A stretch of DNA of 64,000 nt from Octopus sinensis (GCF_006345805.1 NC_043004.1:74772001-74836000), one strand, 5' to 3'. Numbered from the stretch's first letter, positions 1,883 to 60,871 are shown. Numbers and translations are program-made. Notes: generated by a model from the sequence alone, not told the origin.

Positions 1883-3261
1883 AGTACTTATGGATCTTGC
1901 TAAAATTTTTCCAACGACTTGAAGTAATTCAAATCTCACCAAATTATTTTCAAACAAATGTAGTTTTTGAATGCTAGTGACGAAAATCAGGTACTTATTT
2001 TTTTCTAGGAACTTAATAATAAAGAAATTGCATCAGTGTAGAAAGTTTGAAAAAACTAAAAGCTGGAGAAAATTTGAAATACTTTAAAATTGTTGGAAGG
2101 ATTTTAACAAGATTCGTACTTATTTTATCGATCCCGACAAGGTTTGAACTCTGAATGTAAAGAGCCTGAAGCTTCTTGTCCGCCAACAAGGTTAATCGAT
2201 GTTATTTTGCTGAGTGAGTTCTGCTCAAGAAGATCTATAGCACCAAACTAACTGATCGAATGTCTGTTTATGACCCTCAAATACACCAACTCCTTGCCAT
2301 GTCGACCAACACATCATTCTTTTCTTCGTGTTTTCCTAGAATAGTATATCTCGCACTACATAACCTAATGAGCCCCTTTTTAAGACGGTAGGGGGAAATT
2401 GAACTGCTATTTCTAGCATGTCAATCAACCTCGTAAATGCTTCCTTCTAGATCTGCATAGTTTTATTTAATTCTCTTCAGTTCCACCAAAGTCAGCCTTT
2501 TCCTTTATTTTTTTCAAAACTTCATTAAGTTTATTGGAGTTATCTCCCTTACATGGTTTTTTTTCCTCTTTTTCAGAAATTTAAACCCCCGCCTTCGAAG
2601 GATTCTGTCTACAATTGTATGGATAAGTTCATTTAATCTTGGTTTTTGTCAATTCACTATATTAGATACGTGAGGTCCCAGTGTATAGCAGAATTGACTT
2701 CCACAATATATTCGTCTCTTTTTTTCTGAAGGGTAAAAGTTACCGTGAAGGACATTTGACTGCTATTACTTGCATGTCAGTGACACAGATTTCAGTACTG
2801 TTGTTGTTGCTGCTTAGATTTTACTCAGTCCTGACCAAACAGACGTATAACGAAAGGAATTCTAGCCATGACCATCCCGTCCTTTTGTATATTTAAAACA
2901 ATATTATGAAAGTCCCTTGTCACTGAAATGGTGTCTAAAGCAAATATTATGAAAAATATCCCTTTTTAGGACCGTGGGATATGAATTGAGTGAGCTTGTG
3001 GTTGCTATTTCTAACATGTTCAATGACCGCGTAGTTTCCATTGTTAGGCCATACACTAATTTGCTGCTGCTGCTGCTTAACCCTGCTAGAGAAAATTTAG
3101 GATCAAAGACGTTCCAGCCCTGACTATCCCTTACATCTCTGAAGAAGGACGACATTATCCCAAGTTTATCCTTCTTCCCTTTTTTTTAAGATGTTGGATG
3201 TGATTTAAGGGAGATTTAGCTGCTATTTCATTCATCTGAGATCGACAAATGAAGCATTAAT

Positions 3262-7639: not shown

Positions 7640-9995
7640 TCTAGTTTCAGCTTAGAGCTGTGGCCATGCTGATGCACCGCCGTTTTGCTACACTGTTATT
7701 ACTAAGAGCCTCCTCTAATATGTGGCACCTGGTGAAGAATGGAGTTTGATATAGCTACCCTCATTTGCACCTCTTGCGGTGAGGGAGGTTCATCTGGGAC
7801 TCTCGATAGGAAGAGGACCAGCTTTGATTTAAAAACCGCTACATCTACTTTGTGCAAGTTCCTCAGACTCTTTGGGAGAATATTAAAAAGCTGTGGACTC
7901 TTGAAACTTAAGCTGTTGCAGTAACTGGTCCTGAAGCGTGATGGCATTGCTTTGTCACTATGCAGTGTCATCCCGTTCTGGCATTGGTGTAGCTTTCAAT
8001 GCCCAAATTTGGCACACTTCCTTCCAGGATCTTCCAGATATATATTACTGCATACCTCTCTCGTCTTCTCTCCAAGGTGTAGAGTCTTAACTGTTTCAAC
8101 CTTTCCCAGTAGCTGAGCTGTTGCAATCTTCTTTGGGAATCTTCTCTGGATTGCTTCAAGGTCCGCTGCTAATTTCACACTGGTGGGTGACCATAGCTGT
8201 GAGCAGTAATCCAGGTGGCTGAGGACGAATGTCCGCCAGAGGACCATCATGGTTTCCTTACCTCTGGTTCTGAATGTTCTTAGGATCCATTCAGCCAATC
8301 GTCTGCACTTTGTAGCCATCCTAGTAATGTGCACTTGGAAAGAGGTATCATCACTCATGTCGATACCCAGGTCCTTCACTGATTTAAGCTCTGGGATTGA
8401 AATTCCTTGTGGACCGGTGTACCCTGTAAGTTTTATATTCAGTTTTGGATACTGGAGGCGCAAGACTTGGAGTTTTCAGCATTAAACTGCATATTATTTT
8501 CCTCAGCCCATTTGTAAATTGAGTCCTACTCCTGCTGCAGTTGTGCAACATCGCTGGGGTTCTGTATTTTCTGCGAGACTTTCGTATCATAGTATGCAAG
8601 GGTGGCTATTTGGGCATTTGTGGGAATATCTGAGAGGACCAGTATAAAAAGCAGTGGTCCCTAGACATTGCCCTGTGGAACACCACACTATATGTGTGTT
8701 CATATAGGTGGCTCCATTAGCTACTACTGCCTGACTCCTATCTTTCAGGAAGTCATGTAACCACTCCTCAAGTTTTCCAGCTATCCCAAGGTTACGCAGT
8801 TTATGGCATATCATACCATGATCCACCTTGTCAAAAGCTTTTGCAAAATCAAAGTATATTACATCCACATTTGATTTGTTGAGTAACTGCCTCAATACCC
8901 AGTCATAATGTTGTAAGAGCTGGGTCAGGCAGCTCCTGCCTGGTCGAAAACTATGCTGGATATCACTCAGCAAGTTATTTTCTTCAAGGAATGCAACTAG
9001 TTTCCCTCTGACTATCCGTTTCATGACTTTGCTGATGTGTGAAGTCAGAGAGATAGGCCTATAGTTTTTGGCATCTGCTCTACTTACCCCTTTATGTATT
9101 GGGCATATTATTCCCTCCTTCAGCTTGCTTGGCAGTTTGCCATTTGTAAGAAAGCTCTGGAAGAGAATCTGGAGGGGCTTTGCCAAGGCATCTTACACGA
9201 TTTGAGGAAGATTGCTAGGAAACCATCAGGACCAGCAGTTGAGTTTGTGTCCACTTCATCTATGGCTATTAGTATATCTTCTTCGCTAATATCAATGTAT
9301 TCCATTGTAACTGCCTCGCTGATTATAGGTGAGGCGGCAAAGAAGTCCACTGGTTCGTTCACTTGTCTGTGTTCCAACGGGGTGGTAAAGACACTTTTGA
9401 ACTGGTCATTCAGTATCTCACTGATCTTAGTTGGACTGTCTGTGAGGGAGCCATCCTTTTGGAGGAGGGGTCCTATCTTGTAGTGTACTGAGGCTGTTTC
9501 TTTCGCGTAATGAAAGAAGGCCTTTGGGTTTGACTTAATATTTTTATAACCCAGGCTTCTTTGTCTGCTTTCTCCCTCACATAGGATTGTTGCAGCCTTT
9601 TTTCGATCTCCATCAGTGTTGATTTTAGGCGTGATGTTTTGCTACTTATGGGATGTTGGTTGAGTCGATTTGCAACCTTCGTCCGTCGTCTCATGAGGAT
9701 CTTCCTCTCCCTTGGAATCTTGCTCCTATTTGTTTTGGCCTTGTGCTCCGGGACATATTTCTGGCATATGGCTTGCACAGAAGACATGAAACATTCTAGT
9801 TTCATGTCAATATCTGGTGTGGAGAGATATTTGGGCCAGTCCTCTCTGGGGATCTCTCTTTGGATCGATTTCCAATCTGCTTTGTGGGAGTTCGGATTGG
9901 GGAGATTTCTGGTGCTTTCTTTAGGCTGTATGTCTCTGGTTATGTCAATAAGTCTATTGACATGGCCAGTTCTTTTCTGTGTCGTCCTCATACCT
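7640..9995 (-). mobile_element. CR1/L2-type LINE, 5'-truncated, ORF2 linker + RT + 3' tail, frameshifted
   Basis: AGPDGF, KNYRPISLTSHISKVMKRIVR, QHSFRPGRSCLTQLL, YFDFAKAFDKVDHG, SHLDYCSQLWSP, LYTLERRRERY. The 3' tail reads GGCGGTGCATCAGCATGGCCACAGCTCTAAGCTGAAACTAG on the minus strand. Confidence 0.95.
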
Positions 9996-10039
9996 AGTTC
10001 AGCAGTTACAACTTTAGCAGTGGAAAAGATTATGTTATT

Positions 10040-10720
10040 TAAGGTTGTTATTTCATTTCCGTTATTTCTTGAAATCTGTTTCAGAGCAACATTATATATA
10101 ATGATTACGTTTTATTTTTTTTATGCTCTTTGAGAGCTTTGGTAACGTTCCTCCATTGATCATGCCAGTAAACTCAGTCTTTCTTAATTCTCTCATAATA
10201 TCTTCTTTTGATTCTACGACCTTCTCGTTATTTTTCACCTCAAATTCTGTGTCATATCTATTCTGGTGTTCTTGAGGTAGGTATACTTTCTCTTCCTTTA
10301 TCACATACTTGTTCTTCGCTATTCTTTCTTCTGCTTCTTCGTTGGGATGTAGTGCTCGTACAATTGGTTCTCTGTATCTGTTAACTATTTCATCTGCATC
10401 GTTGCTGTTTTCATTTGGCCTGTCATGAGATATTTGTGTCCTAATTTGACTAATTTCAGCGTCAGTTAACATTTTATTCTTAGTTATGTCTCTACGTACA
10501 TTCCTTAATTTATTTGCGCCTATATATCTGCATACTTCGTTGCCTACTATGTTTCTACGTGAAGTATATGTTTGTACAATGCGGTTATTCTTTGGGTTTG
10601 GTTGGTCTGTGTAGAAAACTTTCAACACATCTCTATAATCCTCTGTAGTCCATTTTATGCGTTTTGCTACATGTGATGTTTTGGCGGGGACTCTACAGGG
10701 TTAGGGCTAGTGTTATTTGG
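10040..10720 (-). mobile_element. R4/Dong-like non-LTR retrotransposon, N-terminal ORF fragment
   Basis: RIKWTTEDYRDVLKVFY...YIGANKLRNVRRDITKNKMLTDAEISQIR matches the recalled N-terminal motif of R4/Dong ORFs. It lies next to (TA)n. Confidence 0.65.
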
Positions 10721-13661: not shown

Positions 13662-13882
13662 TAACTGGCAGAAACGTTTGCATGCCGGGCGAAATGCGTA
13701 GCAGTATTTCGTCTGCCGTTACGTTCTGGTTCAAATTCCGCTGAGGTCGACTTTGCCTTTCATCCTTCAGGGGTCGATAAATTAAGTACAAGTTACACAC
13801 TGGGGTCGATGTAATCAACTTAATCCGTTTGTCTGTCCTTGTTTGTCCACTCTGTGTTTAGCCCCTTGTGGGTAGTAAAGAA
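13662..13882 (+). mobile_element. Octopus SINE (same family as 1284), followed by (TAT)n
   Basis: CTGGCAGAAACG...GGTCGACTTTGCCTTTCATCC...GGGTAGTAAAGAAAT. Confidence 0.9.
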
Positions 13883-13885
13883 ATA

Positions 13886-13931
<46 letters not shown>

Positions 13932-30289: not shown

Positions 30290-30640
30290 GGGTGCCAATC
30301 TATTAAATCGACCCCAGTGGTTCTTAACTTATTGACCCCAAATGGATAAGGGGCAAAGTCGATCTCGTCGGAATTTGGGCTCAGAACGTAAAGACAGACG
30401 AATTACCTATTTCTTTACTACCCACAAGGGGCTCAACACAGAGGAGACAAACAAGGACAGACATAGGTATTAAGTCGATTATATCGACCCAGTGCGTAAT
30501 TGGTACTTATTTATCGACCCGAAAGGATGAAAGGCAAAGTTGACCCGGCGGAATTTGAACTCAGAACGTAACGCCAGACGAAATACGGCTACACATTTCG
30601 CCCGGCATGCTAACGTTTCTGCCAGCTCACCGCCTTTAAT
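30290..30640 (-). mobile_element. Octopus SINE, head plus about two tandem body units
   Basis: Reverse complement of the 1284 family. Confidence 0.85.
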
Positions 30641-31033
30641 GGTAGTGTTACTTTAATCAATTTATGAGTCTATAATTTCAAGCCTATATTGATTTCGAAC
30701 TTTAGCACAAGGCCAGAAATTATGCAGGGGTGGCAGGAATAAGTTCGATTACATCGACCTCAGTGTTCGATTCGTGCTTATTGTATCGACACCGAAGGGA
30801 CGAAAGGAAAAATCGACCTTGGAGGAACTCGAACTTAAATCGTAAAGACGGACGAAACGCTGCTAAGTATTTTACCCGAATTTCAAAATATTCTCTGGTG
30901 ATTTGAAGACTGCGACTAGTTTAGAGGGCAGTGAACTCTGTTCTTTGTAATCAATGCCAAACGTTCGTGTGTTTATATGTGTGTGTAGGTTTGTGTTGTG
31001 TGTGTGTAATTGAATATTTACGACGACGTATGG

Positions 31034-32264: not shown

Positions 32265-32300
32265 TATAAATACCGACGCTAAAGCCTTCCCGGATCAGTT
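32265..32300 (+). promoter_or_regulatory. TATA box plus initiator of the galaxin-like gene
   Basis: TATAAATA at 32265-32272 and TCAGTT (Inr-like) at 32295-32300, about 30 bp apart. The ATG is at 32331. Confidence 0.75.
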
Positions 32301-32330
32301 TTTGATCTGGCAATTGACCAAAAGACGACC

Positions 32331-32379
32331 ATGATGCAAAGAACATTAACCATCTTCGCTCTCCTGCTGTTTGTAACAG
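32331..32379 (+). CDS. Galaxin-like secreted Cys-rich protein, exon 1 (signal peptide)
   Basis: Encodes MMQRTLTIFALLLFVT plus one G, followed by the donor AG|GTAAGA (phase 1). Hydrophobic signal-peptide core. Confidence 0.85.
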
Positions 32380-33149
32380 GTAAGAAACACCATACAATTA
32401 TTTGCATTCCATTTACAACTTCTTTTTCACATTAATTTAGTGCTATTGTGTTGTAGTCAGGACTTGGTGGATTGAGAAAATGTTCATAATACTGTGGTAT
32501 TTAGTTAAAGGCTTTTTTTATGTTCCTCGTTTGATAAGGGCCAACTGATGAGTGAAAATGGGGTCGATGATATAAAATCAAGACTTATCCCTTTCCTTCA
32601 CGTATGAAATCTTGTGCGTATTGTATGAAATTATCATTTTGGTTGAGTCAGTAAAAGTCTCACAATATGATTACCAACAGTCAGTCTATTAATTTGTGAT
32701 CAATTCTCGCCGAAATCAACTTTGTCTTTTTATATTTATAATAGATAAAATTAATTTCAGATCAAGAACTGAGATAGATTTCGTCGAGTTTCACCTGGCA
32801 CCGACACATCTGACTGTGTAATAAATTAACGCTCAGAGGCTTGGTAGAGTCAGTGAATACGATTACATGAGATATTTAGTTAATTTGATTCAGCCTTGAA
32901 AGTTTCTCTGCTCTGAAAATTAGCAAAGTTGACGCTTGGAGGCTTAATACTAGAGATGCGGAATTTTGGATGCATTCATTTCAAATCTACTTATTAGTAA
33001 CTGCATTTTTCCTTCGAGTTAACCTGACGTTTGATAATTTAAAGAAAACATCAGAAGTAACTTTTAAGCGACTTTCCTTGAAAATGGATAAGGTTTTGCA
33101 TTATAATGTTATGAAGCACCTGCAGAAAAACAGCTTAGCCCCCCCAAAA

Positions 33150-34400
33150 CATTAATGCTGAATATAGGGCAGCTGAATTTGTGAGGGGAAGAGAGATTCT
33201 TGAATATAACCCAAGATATGGACAATCTGCAACTACCAAAACCAAGAAAACATTGATCGTGCTCACCACATGGTGAAGGACGACAGGCAATTGACTATAA
33301 GTCAAACAACCAATGCGATTAGCGTATCCCGTGCGAGTTGAGAACATTCTACACAATGGACTTGGCTTGCTCGTTTGTGCCAGTCTTCTGACAACTCATC
33401 TAAAGCGAACGCACTTATCACATCACGAGAATATCTGACATTTAGACAGATCCAGCTGGTTTCCTTAAACGTTTCCTAACATATGTTGAGAATTGGCTTC
33501 ATCACTTTGAGCTAGAAACAAAGAGACAATCCGTGAAGTGGAAACACCTACCCTCACCTGCTCCAAAGAAGGCCAAGGTTGTTTCATCAGCAGAGAAAAT
33601 AATGGCCTCATGTTTTTGTAGGGGTAGATAAAAAAGGTATTTCGTTTATTGATAATCTTCGAAAGGATCCCATTGTCAATGCAGAGTATTACACGAAATT
33701 GCTGTTGCAGTTACGAAAAGCTACCAGGAACAAACGTCCAGGGAAACTGACGAAAGAGATGTTGTTTCATCCAGCACAGAAGTATTGCGGCTGTGAACTG
33801 TTTGATCACCTTCCAAATTCCCCTGATTTGGCCCTGTTTGACTATCAACTGTTCCCTATGTAAAAACACTTCACTGGGAACTAGTGTGGAGTGGAAGCAC
33901 TCCGTCGGTTACGACGACGAGGGTCTCGGTTGATCCGAATCAACAGAACAGCCTGCTCGTGAAATTAACGTGTAAGTGGCTGAGCACTCCACAGACACGT
34001 GTACCCTTAACGTAGTTCTCGGGGATATTCAGCGTGACACAGAGAGTGACAAGGCCGGCCCTTTGAAATACAGGTACAACAGAAACAGGAAGTAAGAGTG
34101 AGAGAAAGTTGTGGTGAAAGAGTACAGCAGGGATCACCACCATCCCCTGCCGGAGACTCGTGGAGCTTTAGGTGTTTTCGCTCAATAAACACTCACAACG
34201 CCCGGTCTGGGAATCGAAACCGCGAGTCCGCTGCCCTAACCACTGGGCCATTGCGCCTCCACTACTGGGAACTAGTACTGCAGTGATATTGACGCCTTGT
34301 CTCTTGTCGCTACTAGTTACTTTTGAAATCTTCTTTGAATTACTTGGAATGAAACAATGCAATTATTAATAAGTGGGGTTAAAATTAATGCAGGCAACAC
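33150..34400 (+). mobile_element. Degenerate mariner transposase (in intron 1), interrupted by a SINE
   Basis: ENIDRAHHMVKDDRQLTISQ, WKHLPSPAPKKAKVVSSAEKIMAS, HLPNSPDLALFDYQLFP (YSPDLAP-like motif). Confidence 0.88.
33886..34263 (-). mobile_element. tRNA-derived SINE with a 13-bp TSD
   Basis: ACTGGGAACTAGT at 33873-33885 and 34264-34276. The head on the minus strand is GGAGGCGCAATGGCCCAGTGGTTAGG. Confidence 0.93.
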
Positions 34401-34538
34401 TTCACTGCTCTAGTATCACTCCTTCATCGTTTGCCTATGAACTTTTCAGCCCACCCTCGTCGCAAATTTGTTCTAAATGACCATTCTCCGTTGAAAACTG
34501 TATTTTTCCAATTATAGAAACGTACGAATATCCTATAC

Positions 34539-34636
<98 letters not shown>

Positions 34637-35575
34637 TAGAGAGAGAGAGAGAGAGAAATAGAAAGGGTAAAGTCACATTTCGGTCTTGAATGAACGTGGA
34701 ATTGCATATATGTATATGTATTTACATGTATTTATGCATTATATATACATGCGCGTGTCTCTTTCTATGCGTGCTTTTGTCTACACTTCCTCTCTGTACA
34801 CTTCTGAGTTACTAATATTTCCAACAGCTTCCGTATATTCTATGTCACGGCTCCCTATAAAACATCTTATATTCGCAGGTAATTTCGAATAAGGGAGCTT
34901 ACCTGATACTCTTGTAGAAAGTCATTAAGTTTTTTTGTCAACATTTTAATCCTTATTTTCGCCTTCACGCTTAGCATTAAGCAAAATATATATTTCACAA
35001 ATTCCGCTATTTTGGAAGGCATTCAGCTTATTTCTATTACAAATCTATGGATAATCCTGTACCGAATCAATACGTGAGTTATTTAGTTAGGATAAAGAGA
35101 ATACAGTTTAGTCATTTTTTTTTTTGTGTCATACATTGAAATATCAAAATATTTGAGTTCAAATTATGTCAACTCTATGACACATTTTAACTTTTATGAT
35201 AAAGTTGAAAAGTCGAACAAGTTTTGACAATGGTTGTGTCCCTGCTACAGTTAAATAGTTTTTTATAAATACGGCTGGTGACATATTTGGTGTATACATT
35301 TTTGTCACATCTATATCCACATCTATATTATTTCAGAAGACTAGCCAGAGTCGACTTAGCGTTTCATCCTTTCGGAGTCGATAAATCAAGTACCAGTTAC
35401 GCACTAGGGTCAATGTAATCTAATTAATCCCTTCTCCCAGAGATTATGTTTCTTTTCCGTTCATGCAAACTATTAACTTCGACTGAATACGCTTATATTC
35501 ATACACGCACACATACACACGCACACGCACGTACACATACACGCGCACACAAATACACACAGACAAATATATATA

Positions 35576-35645
<70 letters not shown>

Positions 35646-35709
35646 AATATATATAATACATATATATGTATATGTATGTATATATTATATATAAATATAT
35701 ATATGCATA

Positions 35710-36097
35710 TCTATTATATAAAATCCGTTCTGTCTGTCTGTCTGTGTGTCTTCTAGGATCTCGGGCGTCCTCCATCCGATTGCGCTCAAATTTGATATGT
35801 AGATACCGAGGGTATTAGGGCATGTATAAGTCTTGAAAATTTTACAAAAATCAATTCCAGGAGAGAATGCGATCGATAAAGCCATGAGAACGTGCATTTG
35901 TACGCGCAAGTACATCAGCTGTTGCGATCGATACTACGCGTACGCGAGAAAATCCACGTGCAGTTTGCGCAAAAAAAAGGCCGGCTGGCTTGAAATAATG
36001 CCACAAAATGGGACGGTCAGACAAGTAGTTTTGAGAAAATTTGGTTTAAGTGTTTGACAACTCAGCACCGTCCATTGGACGTGGGGCGTTTTGCTCG
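35710..36097 (+). mobile_element. Short non-autonomous Helitron (~390 bp) in intron 1
   Basis: A|TCTATTATATAAAA start, 3' hairpin CGTCC-ATT-GGACG, end CTCG|T. Confidence 0.72.
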
Positions 36098-36590
36098 TAC
36101 ATACATATGTATGTATGAATGTGTGTACATAAGGCTGGATGAATGTATATACATATGTAGATACAGGTTTGAGAGAAAACAAATTTACTTTCTATACGCA
36201 CAATATATGAAAGTAGATTTCAAATTTAATTTTTTTATAAAAGGATGGGAATTAATAGAGATCTTATGTATGGATATTTGGTCAAGCGACTTTTTCTTGT
36301 TTCCCAATTTTTCAACATATGTGTTATAAGGTTTACCTGATAACATGTTCGAATGAATTGCTGAAGATTGCAAACAATGCTTATATTTAACCTGCATACA
36401 TTTTTGGACGTTCAGTTGTGTGTGAATTAACTTTTCTAAGAGAATTTTTCGTATGATTTAAATATATATTATATAGGTTTTTAATGTGATAAATAATTTC
36501 TAATTGAATGGCTTTTATTTTCTGAATGTGTTCGTATTTGTGTATAATAGGCATACCTGTACTCATTTCGATTATTTTCTTCTATTACAG

Positions 36591-36829
36591 CAGTACAGTC
36601 TTACTATCCATGGTACAGGTGTTATAATGAACACTATAATCCATATACGCATTACTGTTGTAACAATGTAGTTCACCCGAAAACGAATAGTTTAAATGCC
36701 TGTTGTAATGGTATTACACCATACAACGCTCAGTTTCATGGATGTTGTGCAGGAACACTAATCCCTTGGTGGAAAAATACGTGTTGTGTTCGCCACCCGT
36801 GGTGGAATTTCGAATACTTAACGTGCTGA
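36591..36829 (+). CDS. Galaxin-like secreted Cys-rich protein, exon 2 (mature domain)
   Basis: Acceptor TTTTCTTCTATTACAG| in phase 1 gives AVQSYYPWYRCYNEHYNPYTHYCCNNVVHPKTNSLNACCNGITPYNAQFHGCCAGTLIPWWKNTCCVRHPWWNFEYLTC*. The spliced CDS is 288 nt (95 aa), with four CC doublets and YNxxxxxCC galaxin-type repeats. Confidence 0.88.
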
Positions 36830-36970
36830 GATAAATCCAAACTACATATTAGTTCATTCTGATTCTGTAATTGTCCAAGAATGTAATGCAACAAATAGCT
36901 CGATCCTGTCTCGGTAATTCAATCACGTATATAGTTACCTTCATTATATAGATTAGTAATTTTATCATGT

Positions 36971-36976
36971 AATAAA
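36971..36976 (+). terminator. Candidate polyadenylation signal
   Basis: AATAAA about 140 nt after the TGA; a second AATAAA lies near 37147. Confidence 0.55.
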
Positions 36977-37379
36977 TAGTGCTGTTATTAACGTTGTGTG
37001 CCGTTGACGCCGTCTTGAAAGCCTTATTAATGTATTAATTACATAAAATGTTATTAAAGACTTCCTTTTCTTCATGTAAATTTTTAGTTCCTTTCGTAAG
37101 ACATAAATTTGTTTAAATTTTGAAAGTGACATTGTACAGAAAATTGAATAAACTAATATCATGGCAGAAATAAAATTTTGTGTGTTCTTCTCTTTCTCTT
37201 TTTCTGTTATAAGACAAATTCTAATTGAATACAAGGGTTGATAATTTATTTGTATTGCAATCGAAACATACTTTCACATCACCTTATCCTTGAAAGTCTT
37301 GTTTCACATTCCTAAATTCAATAAAACTTTGATATATTTGCAAAGTATATAATATGATGGTGTATGTATATACGTACGC

Positions 37380-38933: not shown

Positions 38934-39184
38934 ATGAGCTTATAGAACAAATGTTAACATATTTCTTGAAAGGATGCATACAAAATAGTAACAAATTTAA
39001 AAAGTTAGATCCAATATATAATGCCAATATGTCTAGCTAGTGAGTTATAGATATTAGTCAAGATGCAATACAGTAAACAAAGTAAATAAAAATGATATAA
39101 ACATAATGGTAAAGAAAGATTTTAAAATGAATAATAAAAATAAATTAATGAAAAATATAAATGTATGTAAAACATATATATTTC

Positions 39185-39410
39185 TTTATTGCCCACAAGG
39201 GGCTAAACATAGAGGGGACAAACAAGGACAGAAAAAGGGATTAAGTAGATTACATCGACCCCAGTGCGTAACTGGTACTTTATTTATCGACCCCGAAAGG
39301 ATGAAGGCAAAGTCGACCTCGGCGGATTTTTAACTCAGAACGTAGCGACAGACGAAATACTGCTAAGCATTTCGCCCGGCGTGCTAACGTTTCTGCCAGC
39401 TCGCCGCCTT
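39185..39410 (-). mobile_element. Octopus SINE
   Basis: Full-length reverse copy of the 1284 family. Confidence 0.9.
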
Positions 39411-40400
39411 ATATGTAAAATATATATAGTATAAAATTGAGATAAAAGAAAAGAATATTTAAATATGCAAGAGAGGAATTATACAATAAAATAAAATAAA
39501 AGATAAGATAGATCGTAAAAATTATTAATCAACTGCTAGAGATGAATTATTTTCATTGCTTTGGTAAAAGATACAATTCAGGAAAATTGTAGCTGAGAAG
39601 CGTTCACATTATTATGTGTCATATTTTTAATCAAGTATAGATAAAGGTCTAAAAAAATTGACCATTAAGTTATATATCGTTTAAGCCTTATTTATCAACC
39701 GTGAGTCAGATATGAATATATGAAAAGTATATATTCAAATTAATGTGTTTACACATTGGCACATGCATACATATATTTACTTACGTGCGCATACACATAT
39801 ATAAATACCTATATAAACATATATATGTACATATGCATACACATGTACAAATATATACATATATACTCGCACATACAAGCGTATATCAACACATACTACA
39901 TAGCTATTCTTATATATATATATAAACTCTTTGTCAAACATATATATTTTTATTAAATATTTGTTATCAGCAAAGTTAAGTTTTTAAGGTTATGGTAGGG
40001 GGAGTTTAATACTTAGGATTATATGGTTAAGATGTCAGAAAAAGGAAAGCTGAACGAGGGTGAGAAGAGGAACAAATAAACTATAAAATAATGAACTAAA
40101 GGTAGTAGAATATGGGGGAGCATGTATTTGGGTATATGTTATAAAGTAGTATAATATATTTGTAATTATTAATTATTAACTATATAAATATGTAAATTGG
40201 AGATTATTTCATAAAAAGAAGGAATAACATATTACGTAATATGAAGAAAACCAGCGTGTCTATATTTATGTATTATGGTCGATTCTTTACGAAGAGTATT
40301 GATATTTAAAGATAAGTAAACGAATATGAATTATATTATAATTTACTTTACTATGGAAAAATAAGAAATAAATAATAGATATGCAATAAATGTATAGGTA

Positions 40401-40617
40401 AAGGCGGCGAGCTGGCAGAAACGTTAGCACGCCGGGCGAAATGCTTAGCGATATTTCGTCTGTCGCTACGTTCTAAGTTCAAATTCCGCCGAGGTCGACT
40501 TTGCCTTTCATCCTTTCGGGGTCGATGAATTAAGTACCAGTTGCGTACTGAGGTCGATCTAATCGACTTTTCCCCTTCCCCAAAATTTCGGGCCTTGTGC
40601 CGAGAGCAAAAAAGAAT
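40401..40617 (+). mobile_element. Octopus SINE
   Basis: AAGGCGGCGAGCTGGCAGAAACGTTAGCACGCCGGGCG head. Confidence 0.9.
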
Positions 40618-45299: not shown

Positions 45300-48200
45300 T
45301 TAGAGCGACAGAAGAATAGTTAAGTTCATTTTTTGGCTCAAAAAGCAAAAAGCAAGGCCATGTAGGGGGACGTGGAGTTATTTACAGGGGTGTTCATGCA
45401 AAGAGTTCAGGCCATTTCTGGTCAAGAGAGGCTTTGAACCGAGCGGTCGTCGGCATCTTCACTATCTCGTCCGGCAGGTTATTCCACGGATCCGTAACTC
45501 GGACGGGGAAAGCCCCTCTCCTTCGATTGAGATGAAATCGTCGCAGATAGAGCTTTTCGGAGTGACCCCGTAGTCTACGCTCTGGAGCAGGAGTGAAGAA
45601 CAGCTCTTTCGAGAGGTTACACTTTCCGCTTATGATGTTGTGAACAAGAATGAGATCACCACGGCGTCGTCGTTTTTCTAGAGAATAAATGTCGAGCGTC
45701 TTCAGCCTTTCTTCATAAGACAAATGCTTGAGACCAAGAACCATGCGGGTAGCCAGCTTCTGGACTCTTTCGAGATGATGTATGTCTTTGAGGAGATAAG
45801 GAGATGAGGCTTCAACCCCGTACTCCAATATAGGTCTCACCAGCGTGACATAGAGCGGTAGGACTATGGCTACTGTGAGCATTCCGTATGACCGTCGAAT
45901 CAAAAACAGAACTCCGCGTGCTTTGTTGGTAGCATGAACGCACTGGGCCGAAGGCGAAAAGGAAGAATTCACCAAGATACCCAGGTCCTTTACCTGGTCG
46001 GTCCTCTCCAGCAGCAGACGACCCTGCTCGAAATCAAGTTGAGTTGCAGGAGAAGAGCCAACAGGCAGATGACAGCACTTTGACACGTTCAGACACAGGT
46101 CCCATTCGTTAGACCATCTCCAAACTTGGTGGAGGCATCGACGAAGATCATCTATATCACCACGAGGAGCGACCAGTTTGACATCATCGGCAAACAGAAG
46201 GGTGTGTTGCGTGAGGTCGTCGGGCAAGTCATTTATGAAGAGTAAAAAAATAAGGGCCCAAGCACTGAACCTTGAGGCACGCCACTGCTCGCACTGGAGA
46301 CGTCGGACAGCGAACCATTAACTTGGACTTGGAAGAAGCGATCTGAGAGGAAGGCACCAACCCATCGTACAATATCCGGATGGAAACTATATGCTTGAAG
46401 CTTGACAAGTAATAGGCGGTGGTTAACCGAGTCAAAAGCTTTGGCAAAGTCCAATAGAACGATGTCAACAACATCACCATCATCCAGAATACGCGTCACC
46501 AATTCTTCCATTACCAGTAAGTTGGTCAAGCATGATCTCTTCGGCACGAAGCTGTGTTGGGAATCAGAGATAGAGGCTGTGTTTTGGAGGTGGAGCAACA
46601 TACTTTTCTTAAGGATGGTTTCGAACATCTTGCTGATTATTGAAGTAAGGGAAACCGGTCGGTAGTTAAGCGGGTCTTTGCGGCTCCCTTTCTTGAAAAT
46701 TGGGCAGATTATCGCTGTTCTCCAGTCCGCAAGTATAACACCCGTCGCCAATGACATGTTGAATACAAGTGTTAAAGGTTCGCAGATGACCGGAGACAAC
46801 GCTTTGATAACCTGTGGGTGTATGCCATCAGGGCCGTGACCCTAGTTGACATCGAGGCCTTGAATAACGCGCTCGACTTCGTCCCGAGTGATGACCAATC
46901 TAGGCATTGGAGGTACCGATCTATCAAATGGAGGGGGTTCACGACCATCATCTTGTTTGAAAATTGTTGAAAAAGCCTTGGCAAATAACTGACTCTGCTG
47001 ATAAGGGTCCTTAATCGATACGCCTGTTGAGTCTACCAACGTTGCAATTCGGTTGTTCAAGCGGGAATTCCGTTGGACATGGGCAAAGAAGGGTTTTGGA
47101 TTGCGACTTGCGTTTGCCACGATTCTGTATTCATATCTGAAGCGTTCTTCCTTTTCAATTTTCACGGCTCGGTCTTGTTGAGTTTTGTACAACTCAAAAG
47201 CTGCAGTCGAGTCCAGATTTTTGAATTCAACCCAAGCAATATCTCTGAGTCTAAGTTCTCGTTTAACCTTCTTCGTCACCCAGGGCTTGTGTTTCTTCTT
47301 CTTGGGAAGCCCAACGGGAACTGCTTGGTCAGTCAACCAGATTACATATGCCTTGAGGGACGACCATAGTTCGTCAACTGAGTACATCGTCATCAGAGAT
47401 CGCCAGTTCAGAAGCGAGGAAGTCTCGGTTAGAATTTCAAGATTGATTGCAGAGAATACTCTGCGTGGCAGCGAAGTAGTCGTGGGCGTAGAAAATGTTG
47501 TGTGCATGTCGAACTTCAGGACCACGTGATCACTCTTGGCAAGAGGGGCGCACACAGATAAGCCTGACACTGATCTTGGATAGCGGGAGTATACCAGATC
47601 CAGCATAGATGGCTGCTGCCCAGACCGATGCCTTGTCAGATATTCAACATGTTGCGATAGAAAACAATCTTCAGCCACGTCAAGAAGGGCCCGGCTGAAC
47701 CGGGAATATGATGTACAAATTGATGCGGGCCCGTCGATCGTGGGAGCGTTGAAGTCTCCTAATATCAAACAGTCATGAGAAGCTGAAACGAATCTTATCG
47801 CTTCGAGTAAATGAGCATCGTCCTGGGGGTCGGCAAGAGGCGGCCTGTAGACAGCTAACACGGGCAGGCAAAACCCGGATAGGCTAAGCTTGCAATAGAC
47901 GGCATCGAATTTTGTTGTAGGTTGAGCATTAGTGGGTAGAATACCGCTGGACGGTTTGAGATCAGATTTAACATACACAGCAACACCTCCACCTCGCCCT
48001 TTTTCTCTGTCACATCTGAAGAGGGTGTAGCCCTGTAGGTGGAATTCCGAGTCCTTTACTGCTGGAGTCAGCCAAGTCTCGGTGGTAGCTATCACATCTG
48101 GGGAATCATGCATGGCCAGTGTAAATAATTCGCTGAACTTAGGAAATAAGGAGCACGAGTTGGTATAGACGATGCTGAGCTGTGAAGTTTGAGGGGCGGG

Positions 48201-51350: not shown

Positions 51351-51394
51351 AAAAGACAACAACAACAACAACGACAACAACAACAACAATGATG

Positions 51395-51445
<51 letters not shown>

Positions 51446-54248: not shown

Positions 54249-54327
54249 GTGTGTGTATGTATGTATATATATATATATGAAAAAACAAGTAAAAAATAGA
54301 AAATGCTAAAATAATTTTATAGTGAAC

Positions 54328-54373
54328 ATTTCAGTACCGGTTTCGGTCATTTTGAGACCTTTTCAACTGTAAC
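54328..54373 (-). ncRNA. Minimal hammerhead ribozyme, U3-A8 variant (left arm)
   Basis: Exact mirror of 57965-58010. Confidence 0.82.
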
Positions 54374-57300
54374 GATTAAATAATTAAATTTAGAAAAATT
54401 AGAAGAAAAGTTTTTTTAAAAGAATATTTCTATAGTAGTGTTCAGATTTAAGTGGCATTCTGCCTTTCTCTGACTCCCTTGTTTGCACTTGTGTGTTCGA
54501 GGTAGTTGTGAGCTCTTGGTAGGGTAGTAGAGAGAAGGCTGGTGAGGAAAGGGGGTGGGAGAATCTGGGAGTGCCCTGATGGTCGTATTTTGAATGGTCA
54601 GTGGCGGCTGGCAGTCTCAGTTCAATTCAGGAGAATATTTATATTGACAGGCTTCTTTATAGAATTAGCGTAGGTGTTATACTAAAAAACATTAGTGACA
54701 AACTTAAGGGGTAGGGGGTGGAGAAGAAGAAGAAGAAGAAGAAGAAGAAGAAGAAGAGAAGGAGAAGGAGAAGATGACGATGATGGTGATGGTGGTGATG
54801 ATTATGACGACGATGATGATGATAACGATGATGATGATGAAGAAGAAGAAGAAGAAGAAGAAGAAGGAGGAGAAGGAGAAGATGGTGGTGATGATGGTGG
54901 CGATGATGATGATGCCGATGATGATGATAACGATGATGATGAAGAAGAAGAGGAAGAAGAAGAAGAAAAAAACAGAGAAGGGAGAATATGAATGGGTGTA
55001 AATATAGCTATGAAGGGGCTGATCAGTAATGGATTCTATGGAGTGTAGTATTTGTGTGTGTATGTATATATATTTTTTTTTTTTTTCTGTTATTCTAAAG
55101 TTGAGGTATATTAATTGTTTGTCGTAGACCCGTTAAGAAGTGGCTTGTATTTTGTAATAAAGAGATTTTCTTTACTTATTCGTTGTCTCGAGGTTGTATC
55201 GTCCCTAAATTGGTAGAGGGGGAAAATTCTGAAGTTTGGTGTTTTTTTGTTGGCGCAAGTATCTATGTGTTGGCTAAAAGCTATTTTTCTGTTTTGGGGA
55301 ATTTTTATCTGGGATCTGTGCAGGGCCATTCGTTTACGCAAACTAGTTTTTTTTGGCCTATGTACTGCTCTTGACACCCGGAGCAGGTTAGTGAGTATAT
55401 TAGGTTCTCCGAAGCACATGTGAAGTTGCTTTTCACTGTAAAACGTTGTCCCTGTTTGAAGGAGAACTCAGAACCCTCGATTAGATAGTCGCATATCCCG
55501 CAATTGGGTCTTCCACATTTTTTTACTGTCGGCTTCTGTGTTGAAGAGTGAATTCGGGCTTGTGTAAGGAGACTTTTCATGGATCTAGGCTGTCTTTTGC
55601 TTTTTATGATCGTGTGTGTTTGGAGGATTGTGTTCATTCTGTGGTCTTTTTTTAGGAGGGGTATGTTGTGGAGGATGGTGTCGAAGGCTTCGTTATTGAG
55701 AGGGTTGTGTGTGGAGATGTATGGTAAGGCTTTTGGTTGTAAGTTTTTCTTTGATTTGGGATGTCTCAGTTCCTTGATGTTAAGTTGAAGGGCACGTTGA
55801 ATGCATTTGTCAATAAGTGAAGGTGGATAGTTCCTGGTGATTAGGGTATCTTTTAGTTCTTGTAGTCGTGTGTCTCTGGTGTTTGCGTTAGGGACTATAG
55901 TGCATATCCTTTTTGCTAGATTGAAGGGGATATTCATCCTGGTGTGTCTGGGGTGGCATGAATTGAATGGAAGATATTGCTTAGAGTCTGTAGGCTTATA
56001 GTATATGTCTGTTTCTATTATATTATTAGCTTTCTTAATGAGGATATCGAGGAAGGGGAGTTGTTGTTGGCTATATTCCATCGTGAATTGGATGTTTACG
56101 TCCAGTCCGTTTAAAATTTTCTGGAATTCTATGAGTTTTTCTATATTTTTATGCCAAAGGATGAAACAGTCATCTAGATATCTCTTCCAGTTGTTTTCTA
56201 TGTAGATGGAGAAAGGGCTGCCATATCTTTCTAGAACCTTACGATACAGACTGATCTCTAGGTATCCTATGACTAGGTTGGCAAAGGAGGGGGCCATTCG
56301 TGTACCCATCGCAGTCCCCGATTTTTGTCGGTAGAAGTTGTCATTGAAGGCGAAGAAGTTATTTTCCAGGATGAATTTAACCCCTTCTATCACAAATATC
56401 CCCTTCAATCTAGCAAAAAGGATATGCACTATAGTCTCTAACGCAAACACCAGAGACACACGACTACAAGAACTAAAAGATACCCTAATCACCAGGAACT
56501 ATCCACCTTCACTTATTGACAAATGCATTCAACGTGCCCTTCAACTTAACATCAAGGAACTGAGACATCCCAAATCAAAGAAAAACTTACAACCAAAAGC
56601 CTTACCATACATCTCCACACACAACCCTCTCAATAACGAAGCCTTCGACACCATCCTCCACAACATACCCCTCCTAAAAAAAGACCACAGAATGAACACA
56701 ATCCTCCAAACACACACGATCATAAAAAGCAAAAGACAGCCTAGATCCATGAAAAGTCTCCTTACACAAGCCCGAATTCACTCTTCAACACAGAAGCCGA
56801 CAGTAAAAAAATGTGGAAGACCCAATTGCGGGATATGCGACTATCTAATCGAGGGTTCTGAGTTCTCCTTCAAACAGGGACAACGTTTTACAGTGAAAAG
56901 CAACTTCACATGTGCTCCGGAGAACCTAATATACTCACTAACCTGCTCCGGGTGTCAAGAGCAGTACATAGGCCAAACAAAAAATGGTTTGCGTAAACGA
57001 ATGGCCCTGCACAGATCCCAGATAAAAATTCCCCAAAACAGAAAAATAGCTTTTAGCCAACACATAGATACTTGCGCCAACAAAAAAACACCAAACTTCA
57101 GAATTTTCCCCCTCTACCAATTTAGGGACGATACAACCTCGAGACAACGAATAAGTAAAGAAAATCTCTTTATTACAAAATACAAGCCACTTCTTAACGG
57201 GTCTACGACAAACAATTAATATACCTCAACTTTAGAATAAAAGAAAAAAAAAAAAAAAAAATATATATATATACACACACAAATACTACACTCCATAGAA

Positions 57301-57964
57301 TCCATTACTAATCAGCCCCTTCATAGCTATATTTACACCCATTCATATTCTCCCTTCTCTGTTTTTTCTTCTTCTTCTTCTTCCTCTTCTTCTTCATCAT
57401 CATCGTTATCATCATCATCGGCATCATCATCATCGCCACCATCATCACCACCATCTTCTCCTTCTCCTCCTTCTTCTTCTTCTTCTTCTTCTTCTTCATC
57501 ATCATCATCGTTATCATCATCATCGTCGTCATAATCATCACCACCATCACCATCATCGTCATCTTCTCCTTCTCCTTCTCCTTCTTCTTCTTCTTCTTCT
57601 TCTTCTTCTTCTTCTCCACCCCCTACCCCTTAAGTTTGTCACTAATGTTTTTTAGTATAACACCTACGCTAATTCTATAAAGAAGCCTGTCAATATAAAT
57701 ATTCTCCTGAATTGAACTGAGACTGCCAGCCGCCACTGACCATTCAAAATACGACCATCAGGGCACTCCCAGATTCTCCCACCCCCCTTTCCTCACCAGC
57801 CTTCTCTCTACTACCCTACCAAGAGCTCACAACTACCTCGAACACACAAGTGCAAACAAGGGAGTCAGAGAAAGGCAGAATGCCACTTAAATCTGAACAC
57901 TACTATAGAAATATTCTTTTAAAAAAACTTTTCTTCTAATTTTTCTAAATTTAATTATTTAATC

Positions 57965-58010
57965 GTTACAGTTGAAAAGGTCTCAAAATGACCGAAACCG
58001 GTACTGAAAT
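57965..58010 (+). ncRNA. Minimal hammerhead ribozyme, U3-A8 variant (right arm)
   Basis: GTTACAG-TTGAAAA(57972)-GGTC TCAAAAT GACC-GAAA(57994)-CCGG-TA-CTGAAAT. Confidence 0.82.
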
Positions 58011-58223
58011 GTTCACTATAAAATTATTTTAGCATTTTCTATTTTTTACTTGTTTTTTCATATATATCAACTCGTGTGTTCCTTTTCACCCTTATACATT
58101 TATATATACGTGTGAGTGTGTGTGTGCATTTGTGTATGTGTTTGTACCCCCAGTCAACGCTTGGAAAATAGTGTTGGTGTGTTTACGTCCCTGTAACTTA
58201 GATGTTTTGCAAACAACTTGGAC

Positions 58224-60490: not shown

Positions 60491-60669
60491 AATATATATC
60501 ACTCAACTCAAATAAAATATTTTATTAAGCTCTACTATGTTATTGAGTAATATTTTTTCCGATAGTGTACATATTGTATACGTATACGTGTACATATATC
60601 TTATCTATCGATACATACATATATGTGTTTGTATGTGTGCGTGTGTACATACATACTTATACATACACA

Positions 60670-60778
60670 CACACACACGCGCATATGTGTGTGTGTGTGT
60701 GTGTGTGTGCGTGTGTGTGTGTGTGTGTGTATGTGTGTGTGTGTGTGCGTGTGTGTGTGTGTGTGTGTATGTGTGTGT

Positions 60779-60820
<42 letters not shown>
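60670..60820. repeat. (GT)n microsatellite
   Basis: Long imperfect GT run. Confidence 0.97.
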
Positions 60821-60824
<4 letters not shown>

Positions 60825-60871
60825 CATTTGAGAATCCGATTCGAAATTTCTAGGACTGAACATGTTGTAAG

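What the first reader, a model, noticed from the sequence alone, without database searches (positions are those of the whole stretch)
32265..36976. Hidden two-exon gene for a 95-aa secreted galaxin-like mini-protein (10 Cys, rich in Tyr/Trp/His)
Seen in the sequence: TATA and Inr, a signal-peptide exon with a strong GTAAG donor, a 4.2-kb TE-filled phase-1 intron, then an in-frame exon with C-CC-CC-CC-CC-C spacing and YNPxxxxCC / YNxxxxxCC motifs. The predicted cleavage VQS|YY leaves a 75-aa mature peptide with 9 Tyr, 5 Trp (two PWW), 5 His and no Asp. The gene is absent from the ORF track. Established: dicysteine repeats of this type define galaxins (coral skeletal matrix; a galaxin from the squid Euprymna is implicated in symbiont control). 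Inference: this is a much shorter, aromatic-rich lineage-specific version, possibly antimicrobial or a structural/adhesive secreted matrix peptide.
Basis: partly seen in the sequence, partly recalled or inferred. Interest (0 to 1): 0.75.

Follow-up and report, generated by a model that had tools for sequence, protein, structure and literature searches.

The report
Small octopus galaxin-like secreted protein gene
The window holds a real-looking two-exon octopus gene for a 95-residue secreted, cysteine-rich "mini-galaxin" that current annotation misses or wrongly fuses to a neighbouring gene; three relatives are already listed in octopus databases, so it is a new member of a known kind, not a new kind of gene.

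Summary
It shows a TATA box and Inr, a 49-nt signal exon (32331-32379), a GTAAG donor and a 4,211-nt phase-1 intron. Exon 2 (36591-36829) completes a 95-aa protein with a C-CC-CC-CC-CC-C pattern, followed by AATAAA at 36971.

The galaxin call passes a profile test: Pfam Galaxin_repeat scores 37.3 bits against a cut-off of 28. The window is about 98% identical to Octopus vulgaris chromosome OX597821.1.

Only three proteins among 5.8 billion clusters are end-to-end relatives, all from Octopus:
- O. sinensis XP_036361356.1, named "galaxin-like" (96 aa). It has the same two-exon structure and an identical signal exon.
- Two O. bimaculoides entries.

In O. vulgaris, exon 1 and half of exon 2 are fused into a 96-kb, 350-aa model. 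That model is a chimera, because the downstream gene has its own start codon and signal peptide.

Between paralogues the promoter, signal exon and UTRs are conserved, while the mature-peptide coding part is nearly saturated with changes.

Expression and function are untested. My best reading is a secreted, disulfide-stapled β-hairpin binding protein at an epithelial or defence interface. "TE-filled intron" is overstated. Interest is modest.

The parts
32265..32272 (+). TATA box (TATAAATA)
   Evidence: Read directly. Identical in the O. sinensis paralogue promoter.
32295..32301 (+). Initiator-like TCAGTTT. The inferred transcription start is A32297, giving a 34-nt 5'UTR with no upstream ATG.
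   Evidence: Read directly. TCAGTT is conserved in the paralogue. The start site is inferred, not mapped.
32331..32379 (+). Coding exon 1: MMQRTLTIFALLLFVT plus the first base of codon 17 (signal-peptide n- and h-regions).
   Evidence: It is 49/49 nt identical to exon 1 of O. sinensis XP_036361356.1 and to O. vulgaris.
32380..36590 (+). Phase-1 intron of 4,211 nt, with GTAAGA donor and a polypyrimidine tract plus TTACAG acceptor.
   Evidence: Donor and acceptor are conserved in both O. sinensis paralogues.
33897..34262 (.). SINE-like interspersed repeat inserted in the intron.
   Evidence: 83% match to an unrelated place in L001 (28200-28590), and it interrupts the intron-to-intron alignment. 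No tRNA was detected.
34540..35720 (.). Microsatellites in the intron: (TA)n at 34540-34638 and 35594-35720, CA-rich at 35500-35565. Also a short multi-copy repeat at 35344-35437.
36591..36829 (+). Coding exon 2: the end of the signal peptide (AVQS), the 75-78-aa mature mini-galaxin with four di-Cys motifs, and stop TGA at 36827-36829.
   Evidence: Pfam Galaxin_repeat matches residues 27-93. There is 1 difference in 239 nt from O. vulgaris (H66D).
36710..36712 (+). Weak internal GT (G|GTATTA) that the O. vulgaris gene model CAI9727408.1 uses as a donor. It truncates the galaxin frame after ...NACCN.
   Evidence: P0096 is identical to the window protein for residues 1-56 and then jumps to window 61685.
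36830..36995 (+). 3'UTR with polyadenylation signal AATAAA at 36971-36976.
   Evidence: AATAAA is at the same aligned place in the O. sinensis P0001 gene, and GATAAA in the upstream paralogue. There are 0 differences in 166 nt from O. vulgaris.

Best explanation
This is a stand-alone, two-exon protein-coding gene of an octopus of the Octopus vulgaris / O. sinensis complex. It encodes a 95-aa precursor of a secreted mini-galaxin.

Shown or supported by sequence:
- Exon 1 supplies a conserved signal peptide.
- Exon 2 supplies a mature peptide of 75-78 aa.
- That peptide is built from two galaxin A-B repeat units (YNPxxxxCC / xxVxxKxxxxxACC) plus a terminal half-unit.

Inferred:
- The ten cysteines probably form five disulfides. 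These would staple a stack of four short β-hairpins (predicted) that displays many Tyr, Trp and His side chains.
- The gene belongs to a small Octopus-restricted cluster of such genes. Their promoter, signal exon and UTRs stay alike, while the mature-peptide coding part diverges almost to saturation. This pattern is typical of secreted defence or interaction peptides.
- It most likely works as an extracellular binding protein at an epithelial or mucosal surface. There its aromatic surface would bind microbial or cuticular glycans such as chitin, or cell envelopes, for defence or microbiota control, like the squid galaxins EsGal1 and EsGal2.

Confidence by step: about 0.85-0.9 that it is a real gene of this structure and family, and about 0.35 for the defence/binding role specifically.
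For: Gene structure:
- All signals are present and canonical.
- The same TATA, Inr, ATG context, donor, acceptor, stop position and AATAAA recur in the O. sinensis gene for XP_036361356.1 (96 aa, "galaxin-like"). Most also recur in an unannotated paralogue 9.4 kb upstream of it.

Family:
- Pfam Galaxin_repeat scores 37.3 bits (cut-off 28). Relatives score 50.1 and 37.4 bits.
- A 3-sequence profile finds 549 proteins at E<=1e-3; the best 150 listed are mostly multi-repeat proteins, and those whose names were checked come from animals plus a bacterial MAG.

Constraint:
- O. bimaculoides A0A0L8FU16 (94 aa) keeps all 10 Cys, PWY, CCNN(V/I)VH-KTNS-NACCN and IPWWK, at 65% identity. This includes the part downstream of the internal donor.
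- Against O. vulgaris, the transcribed exons have 1 mismatch in 520 nt, versus 54 in 4,143 nt of intron.

Evolutionary mode (window gene versus the O. sinensis paralogue):
- Exon 1 is 49/49 identical and the promoter is 88% identical.
- The mature part has pS 0.735 and pN 0.447, barely above the shuffle level.

Cluster: the P0001 gene lies about 151 kb upstream of, and on the same strand as, the O. sinensis orthologue of the gene downstream of the window locus.

Fold: the AF2 model has mean pLDDT 73.8 and four β-hairpins.

Functional analogy: ten Euprymna galaxins are expressed in symbiotic epithelia, and repeat peptides from EsGal1 and EsGal2 inhibit bacteria (PMC12773714).
Against: - No transcript, junction read or peptide was examined.
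- No transcript-derived protein of this family exists among about 15 billion proteins, although Logan-derived proteins of the neighbouring gene do.
- The mature peptide is only +2 at pH 7 and about neutral at seawater pH. The EsGal proteins carry +5 to +21.5, so a classical cationic antimicrobial mechanism is not favoured.
- The AF2 model is of moderate confidence. Its last ~18 residues are poor, and it has no PDB neighbour.
- Orthology with the O. bimaculoides protein is assumed, not shown. Its DNA could not be fetched.
- Gene conversion of the flanks, rather than diversifying selection on the core, could produce the conserved-flank / divergent-core pattern.
Confidence: 0.6

Rival explanations
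1. It is a structural or cross-linking matrix component. The mini-galaxin would be secreted into a hardened or chitinous extracellular material (sucker lining cuticle, beak, radula, stylet or egg chorion). There Tyr and His allow cross-linking, and aromatic residues bind chitin, like coral and mollusc galaxin-type matrix proteins.
For: - Galaxins were defined as skeletal matrix proteins, and galaxin-like Cysrichin is a shell matrix protein.
- The mature peptide is 21% aromatic with 5 His, has no N-glycosylation sequon and is near-neutral.
- Five predicted disulfides fit a stable extracellular building block.
Against: - Rapid divergence of the mature part between paralogues and species is unusual for a framework protein.
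- There are only two repeats and no acidic domain.
- No expression data.
Confidence: 0.2
2. It is a secreted signalling or interaction peptide of another kind: a reproductive or pheromone-like protein, or a salivary-gland (venom-type) peptide. Its target co-evolves, which would explain the conserved signal and hypervariable mature region.
For: - The conserved signal exon and UTRs with a near-saturated mature region, plus a clustered small family, are the evolutionary signature of such peptide families (established knowledge).
- It is a small, disulfide-rich stable fold.
Against: - No galaxin-repeat protein is known to me in these roles.
- No literature hit links these accessions to any tissue.
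- There is no propeptide or dibasic processing site.
Confidence: 0.12
3. The annotated O. vulgaris product is the true one. Exon 1 plus the first 120 nt of exon 2 would serve as the signal and N-terminal module of a 350-aa MANSC-domain membrane protein, through splicing from the internal donor at 36710 to exons 25-70 kb downstream.
For: A deposited gene model, CAI9727408.1, has exactly this structure.
Against: - The O. sinensis orthologues of the downstream gene start with their own Met and signal peptide (MLLSILSVLTAVSTC...). That sequence sits in the interior of the 350-aa model, preceded by translated 5'UTR.
- The internal donor G|GTATTA is weak.
- The bridging exon (61685-61798) is part of a longer open frame that looks transposon-derived.
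- The part of exon 2 that the model discards is conserved, with its Cys pairs, up to a conserved stop and poly(A) signal.
Confidence: 0.04
4. It is a silent or decaying gene copy. The structure is intact by recency, but the gene is not expressed.
For: - The family is absent from transcript-derived protein sets.
- The upstream O. sinensis paralogue has lost one A-B repeat and has an odd number (7) of Cys.
Against: - The frame, splice sites, TATA and poly(A) signal are all intact in two genomes.
- Exons are more conserved than the intron.
- All 10 Cys are kept in the O. bimaculoides relative.
Confidence: 0.08

Closest known systems
Octopus sinensis XP_036361356.1, 'galaxin-like' (96 aa; P0001), and its gene at CM016866.1:74.72 Mb
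   Same: - Same two-exon layout with a phase-1 intron.
- Exon 1 coding sequence identical in all 49 nt.
- Conserved TATA, Inr, donor, acceptor and AATAAA.
- 10 Cys in the same C-CC-CC-CC-CC-C pattern.
- Pfam Galaxin_repeat above threshold.
   Different: - It is a paralogue, not an orthologue. The mature part is only about 42% identical, with indels.
- It lacks both PWW motifs.
- Its intron is 9.0 kb rather than 4.2 kb.
Octopus bimaculoides A0A0L8FU16 (94 aa; P0027)
   Same: Closest full-length protein at 65% identity. All 10 Cys, PWY, CCNN(V/I)VH-KTNS-NACCN, IPWWK and the C-terminal WW...L-C are kept. It is the likely orthologue.
   Different: About 35% of residues differ, which is fast for congeneric species. 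Its net charge is about 0. Its DNA and gene structure could not be retrieved.
Euprymna scolopes galaxins EsGal1-10
   Same: They are cephalopod secreted proteins with tandem di-Cys repeats. They are epithelial, and derived repeat peptides inhibit bacteria (PMC12773714).
   Different: - They are multi-repeat proteins, with up to 7 repeats.
- They are strongly cationic (+5 to +21.5). The window protein has two repeats and about +2.
- No functional or expression data exist for the octopus mini-forms.
Coral galaxin (Galaxea fascicularis, Acropora millepora) and mollusc galaxin-like matrix proteins
   Same: They have a signal peptide followed by ~30-aa tandem repeats, each with two di-Cys motifs (PMC2726143). 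They fall in the same Pfam family.
   Different: - They are about 300-aa mature proteins with about ten repeats.
- They have a dibasic propeptide site and are acidic or Ser-rich.
- They are associated with the skeletal matrix. None of this is seen here.
Octopus vulgaris CAI9727408.1 (350 aa; P0096)
   Same: Its first 56 residues are identical to the window protein, and it comes from the same locus (~98% DNA identity).
   Different: It is a chimeric model. It leaves exon 2 at an internal GT, passes through a transposon-like exon, and reads into the neighbouring MANSC-domain gene including that gene's own start codon.

Membership tests
Galaxin / galaxin-like repeat proteins (Pfam PF24748) | Profile match to the Galaxin_repeat model above the curated gathering score | tested here: met
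   37.3 bits against a cut-off of 28, E 3.2e-9, residues 27-93 on model positions 60-127 of 131. Relatives score 50.1 and 37.4 bits.
Galaxin / galaxin-like repeat proteins (Pfam PF24748) | Tandem repeats carrying di-cysteine motifs (two CC per ~30-aa unit) | tested here: met
   CC at 39/40, 54/55, 68/69 and 81/82, spaced 15, 14 and 13 residues, alternating YNP...CC and ...K.....ACC half-units. That makes two full units plus capping single Cys. Definition from PMC2726143.
Galaxin / galaxin-like repeat proteins (Pfam PF24748) | N-terminal signal peptide (secreted protein) | tested here: inconclusive
   By inspection it is canonical: an n-region with Arg4, a 12-residue hydrophobic core TLTIFALLLFVT, and small residues at -3/-1 for two possible sites. 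No signal-peptide predictor was available. The same N-terminus is present in the two full-length annotated relatives, P0001 and P0027.
Galaxin sensu stricto (coral skeletal matrix galaxin) | Long array (~10 repeats, ~300-aa mature protein) with a dibasic propeptide site | tested here: not met
   The mature peptide is 75-78 aa with two repeat units and no dibasic site. It is therefore galaxin-like, not a galaxin orthologue.
Galaxin sensu stricto (coral skeletal matrix galaxin) | Presence in a biomineral organic matrix | not testable with these tools
   This needs proteomics or in situ data.
Octopus mini-galaxin cluster (XP_036361356.1 / A0A0L8FU16 type) | Shared MMQRTL... signal exon, a phase-1 long intron, and a single mature exon of 50-115 aa ending in ...L-x-C stop | tested here: met
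Cephalopod antimicrobial galaxins (EsGal type) | Strong net positive charge and demonstrated bacterial growth inhibition | tested here: not met
   The charge is +2.1 at pH 7 and about 0 at pH 8.1, against +5 to +21.5 for EsGal proteins. Activity is not testable here.

The most novel reading that the evidence does not exclude
Octopuses carry a lineage-specific, largely unannotated cluster of two-exon mini-galaxin genes. Their signal exon, promoter and UTRs are held constant while the two-repeat mature peptide diversifies faster than the adjacent non-coding DNA. That would make them a cephalopod analogue of hypervariable defence or interaction peptide families, with a new aromatic-rich (PWW) disulfide-stapled β-hairpin scaffold that binds microbial or chitinous surfaces without relying on charge.
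Probability: 0.25. Interest if true: 0.55.

Novelty: new member of a known kind. Interest (0 to 1): 0.33.

Why it matters
- **Annotation:** a correct 95-aa model would replace a 96-kb chimeric model in the O. vulgaris annotation. It would also add at least two unannotated genes to the octopus gene set.
- **Gene finding:** short two-exon genes with multi-kilobase introns are missed by current cephalopod annotation.
- **Biology:** galaxins are the most strongly organ-specific transcripts in squid symbiotic organs, yet octopus has been credited with only two galaxins (PMC12773714). A cluster of fast-evolving mini-forms would widen that picture. It would also give a small (about 9 kDa), synthesisable scaffold for testing what a galaxin repeat actually binds.

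Tried and rejected
- **Paralogues inside the window:** tblastn of the peptide and of three relatives found none.
- **ORF length as evidence:** rejected. It is not unusual in this window.
- **PDB by sequence and by fold:** nothing.
- **IGFL Pfam hit:** below threshold (E 0.18) and dismissed.
- **O. bimaculoides DNA for a true orthologue dN/dS:** the protein is not on record with a contig.
- **Segment identities with free end gaps:** the measure was invalid because shuffles scored as high. It was redone with penalised ends.
- **tRNA origin of the intronic SINE-like insert:** no tRNA found.
- **hAT-transposase identity of the chimeric model's third exon:** Pfam gave no support, so it stays an impression from memory.
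- **Literature on the accessions:** no paper mentions them. Heath-Heckman 2014 is not held.
- **Source species:** not resolved. The window differs from O. vulgaris by 0.84% mismatches. An O. sinensis stretch 40 kb away differs by 1.35%. The window could therefore be another O. vulgaris haplotype or O. sinensis.
Full report
**1. The observation**

- TATAAATA lies at 32265-32272. An initiator-like TCAGTTT has its A at 32297.
- ATG is at 32331, with A at -3.
- Exon 1 ends at 32379 and is followed by GTAAGA.
- A pyrimidine tract and TTACAG end at 36590. Exon 2 runs from 36591 to TGA at 36827-36829.
- AATAAA lies at 36971-36976.
- The intron is 4,211 nt and phase 1.

The product is MMQRTLTIFALLLFVTAVQSYYPWYRCYNEHYNPYTHYCCNNVVHPKTNSLNACCNGITPYNAQFHGCCAGTLIPWWKNTCCVRHPWWNFEYLTC (95 aa). 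It has 10 Cys, 9 Tyr, 5 Trp, 5 His and no Asp.

The open frame by itself is not remarkable. The window has 86 stop-free frames of at least 92 codons, and 12% of local shuffles produce one. The case therefore rests on comparative evidence.

**2. Family call**

- Pfam's Galaxin_repeat model (PF24748) matches residues 27-93 at 37.3 bits, above its gathering score of 28.
- The repeat anatomy fits the published definition of ~30-aa units with two di-Cys motifs (PMC2726143). Four CC pairs are spaced 15, 14 and 13 residues apart. They alternate YNP....CC and ..V..K.....ACC half-units, capped by single Cys at both ends.
- A profile of three family sequences, run against 1.84 billion representative proteins, found 549 proteins at E<=1e-3. 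The best 150 listed are mostly multi-repeat proteins. The ten whose names were checked included proteins from sea urchins, a starfish, an acorn worm and a bacterial MAG.

The protein is galaxin-like by profile and by architecture. It is not a galaxin orthologue, because it has two repeat units rather than about ten and no dibasic propeptide site.

**3. Where the window comes from and what annotation says**

The exhaustive search returned a 350-aa protein (P0096) whose first 56 residues are identical to the window protein. It is Octopus vulgaris CAI9727408.1, a "hypothetical predicted protein". Its gene model spans 96 kb on chromosome OX597821.1.

The window aligns to that locus at 97.5-99% identity. 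Mismatches run at 0.84%. An O. sinensis stretch further along the same region differs from O. vulgaris by 1.35%. The window is therefore from the O. vulgaris / O. sinensis complex, and I could not decide which.

The O. vulgaris model does the following:
- It uses exon 1.
- It leaves exon 2 at a weak internal donor (G|GTATTA at 36710/36711).
- It passes through a 114-nt exon at window 61685-61798 that is part of a longer open frame.
- It continues into a MANSC/MANEC-domain, Ser/Thr-rich membrane protein more than 70 kb away.

The O. sinensis orthologues of that downstream gene (P0171-P0173) begin with their own Met and signal peptide, MLLSILSVLTAVSTCIIPASG. That very sequence lies in the interior of the 350-aa model. 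The model is therefore a chimera. The gene is not so much hidden as mis-joined in one genome, and no 95-aa protein is on record in any.

**4. Relatives**

Among 5.8 billion protein clusters, only three proteins are end-to-end relatives, all from Octopus:

| Protein | Species | Length | Note |
|---|---|---|---|
| XP_036361356.1, "galaxin-like" | O. sinensis | 96 aa | Paralogue, same gene structure |
| A0A0L8FU16 | O. bimaculoides | 94 aa | Closest full-length relative |
| A0A0L8FGL5 | O. bimaculoides | 134 aa | Single-exon mis-model that starts in the intron |

- **The O. sinensis gene (L001)** has the same structure. Its exon 1 coding sequence is 49/49 identical, and a 9.0-kb phase-1 intron precedes exon 2. 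The TATA box, Inr, donor, acceptor and poly(A) signal sit at aligned positions.
- **A second O. sinensis paralogue** is unannotated. Its mature exon lies 9.4 kb upstream of that gene (L001 393-562). It has lost one A-B unit and has 7 Cys.
- **The cluster.** The XP_036361356.1 gene lies about 151 kb upstream of the O. sinensis MANSC gene, on the same chromosome and strand. In O. vulgaris the window gene lies about 74 kb upstream of the same gene.
- **The O. bimaculoides 94-aa protein** is 65% identical. It keeps all ten Cys, PWY, CCNN(V/I)VH-KTNS-NACCN, IPWWK and the C-terminal WW...L-C. This includes the half of exon 2 that the chimeric model throws away.

**5. Constraint and mode of evolution**

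Against O. vulgaris, the transcribed exons (5'UTR, CDS, 3'UTR; 520 nt) carry one mismatch, H66D. The intron carries 54 in 4,143 nt plus 104 gap columns. Pooling the intron and both flanks gives a mismatch rate of about 1.1%, so 5-6 mismatches would be expected. The Poisson probability of seeing one or none is about 0.02 (my arithmetic).

Between the window gene and the O. sinensis paralogue the pattern is the reverse of what a housekeeping gene shows:
- The promoter is 88% identical and exon 1 is 100% identical.
- The intron ends are 64-74% identical and the 3'UTR is 65%.
- The mature coding part is 62%, against a shuffle level of 57%.
- In the mature part, pS is 0.735 and pN is 0.447.

Conserved flanks with a near-saturated mature core fit two explanations. 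One is diversifying selection on the secreted part. The other is gene conversion that homogenises the flanks. I could not separate the two.

**6. Structure and chemistry**

- An AlphaFold2 model built from a 19-sequence alignment has mean pLDDT 73.8 and pTM 0.55.
- It shows four β-hairpins (strands 8-10/13-15, 20-23/26-29, 36-38/42-44, 49-52/55-58). Its last ~18 residues are poorly defined.
- Foldseek finds no PDB neighbour, and there is no sequence match in the PDB.
- The 75-aa mature peptide weighs 9.0 kDa. Its pI is 8.1, and its charge is +2 at pH 7 and about 0 at pH 8.1.
- It is 21% aromatic and has no N-glycosylation sequon.

**7. Intron content**

"TE-filled" is overstated.
- About 1.8 kb of the intron aligns to the paralogue's intron.
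- One ~370-nt SINE-like element (33897-34262) and a short multi-copy repeat (35344-35437) are inserted.
- (TA)n and CA-rich microsatellites occupy 34540-34638 and 35500-35720.
- No ORF with a TE domain is present.

**8. Function**

The following is supported by sequence: it is a gene with a signal-type N-terminus and two galaxin repeats, conserved in Octopus.

The following is inferred:
- The protein is secreted.
- It forms five disulfides.
- It has a hairpin-stack fold that displays aromatic residues.

The best available functional analogy is the squid galaxins. Ten EsGal genes are the most organ-specific transcripts of the light organ and accessory nidamental gland epithelia. Repeat peptides of EsGal1 and EsGal2 inhibit bacteria (PMC12773714).

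Those proteins are strongly cationic, and this one is not. If it acts on microbes, I expect binding through aromatic-glycan or aromatic-envelope contacts rather than charge-driven membrane attack.

A matrix or cuticle role, or a signalling, reproductive or salivary role, remains open. The rivals are scored in their own section.

**9. Verdict**

The gene is a new, unannotated or mis-joined member of a small family that automatic pipelines already name "galaxin-like". No paper discusses the family.

It is a useful annotation correction with a mildly interesting evolutionary pattern, not a new kind of system.

Noticed in passing
window 61685-61798 (open frame continues to 61992); also 62372-62845: This is the third exon of the chimeric O. 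vulgaris model. It lies inside a longer open frame (…FSLVIDGWTKGSTHF…). A nearby ORF carries …EHFFSSAGYAF…. From memory both resemble hAT-type transposase motifs, but Pfam gave no significant hit.
   Followed up: partly
window 54278-58093: This ~3.8-kb stretch is absent from the O. vulgaris reference locus (L002 joins at ~31770 inside a TA/TG microsatellite). It contains ORFs at 55305-56492 (-) and 56338-57219 (+). The second has a GIY-YIG domain hit at the Pfam threshold, so a Penelope-like element insertion polymorphism is possible. Conversely, L002 32395-33727 has no counterpart in the window.
   Followed up: partly
window 45394-48113 (-) and 7996-10628: These are LINE-type retrotransposon remains. 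The first carries an endonuclease/exonuclease/phosphatase domain plus reverse transcriptase, broken into three ORFs. A second reverse-transcriptase fragment lies near 8.6-9.2 kb.
   Followed up: partly
window 1284-1889, 13665-13888, 30299-30873, 39171-39410, 40398-40601, 35344-35437: A ~200-400-nt interspersed repeat is present in at least six copies in the window and several in the O. sinensis locus, at 82-90% identity. It is an abundant octopus SINE-like family and was not classified.
   Followed up: no
L001 393-562 (O. sinensis CM016866.1, about 74.7098 Mb): An unannotated paralogue's mature exon encodes VQSCYWNYCGGHWYNPYTQRCCGTTIIPWWRAHCCRGWLHGWPWWNRHWHWYLVC. It is one repeat shorter, extremely Trp/His-rich, and has an odd number (7) of Cys. 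Its exon 1 lies beyond the fetched locus.
   Followed up: partly
window 36266-36337 (intron, ~250 nt upstream of exon 2): The N-terminus of the mis-modelled O. bimaculoides protein A0A0L8FGL5 (MCGYLTKRLFL…) matches this intronic stretch at 71%, and also L001 18919. An open intronic frame that is conserved among paralogues misled that single-exon model.
   Followed up: no
window 51380-51442 (-) and 60537-60853: These microsatellites translate as poly-Tyr/His/Cys or poly-Cys-Val. They give spurious weak tblastn hits to Cys/Tyr-rich queries.
   Followed up: no
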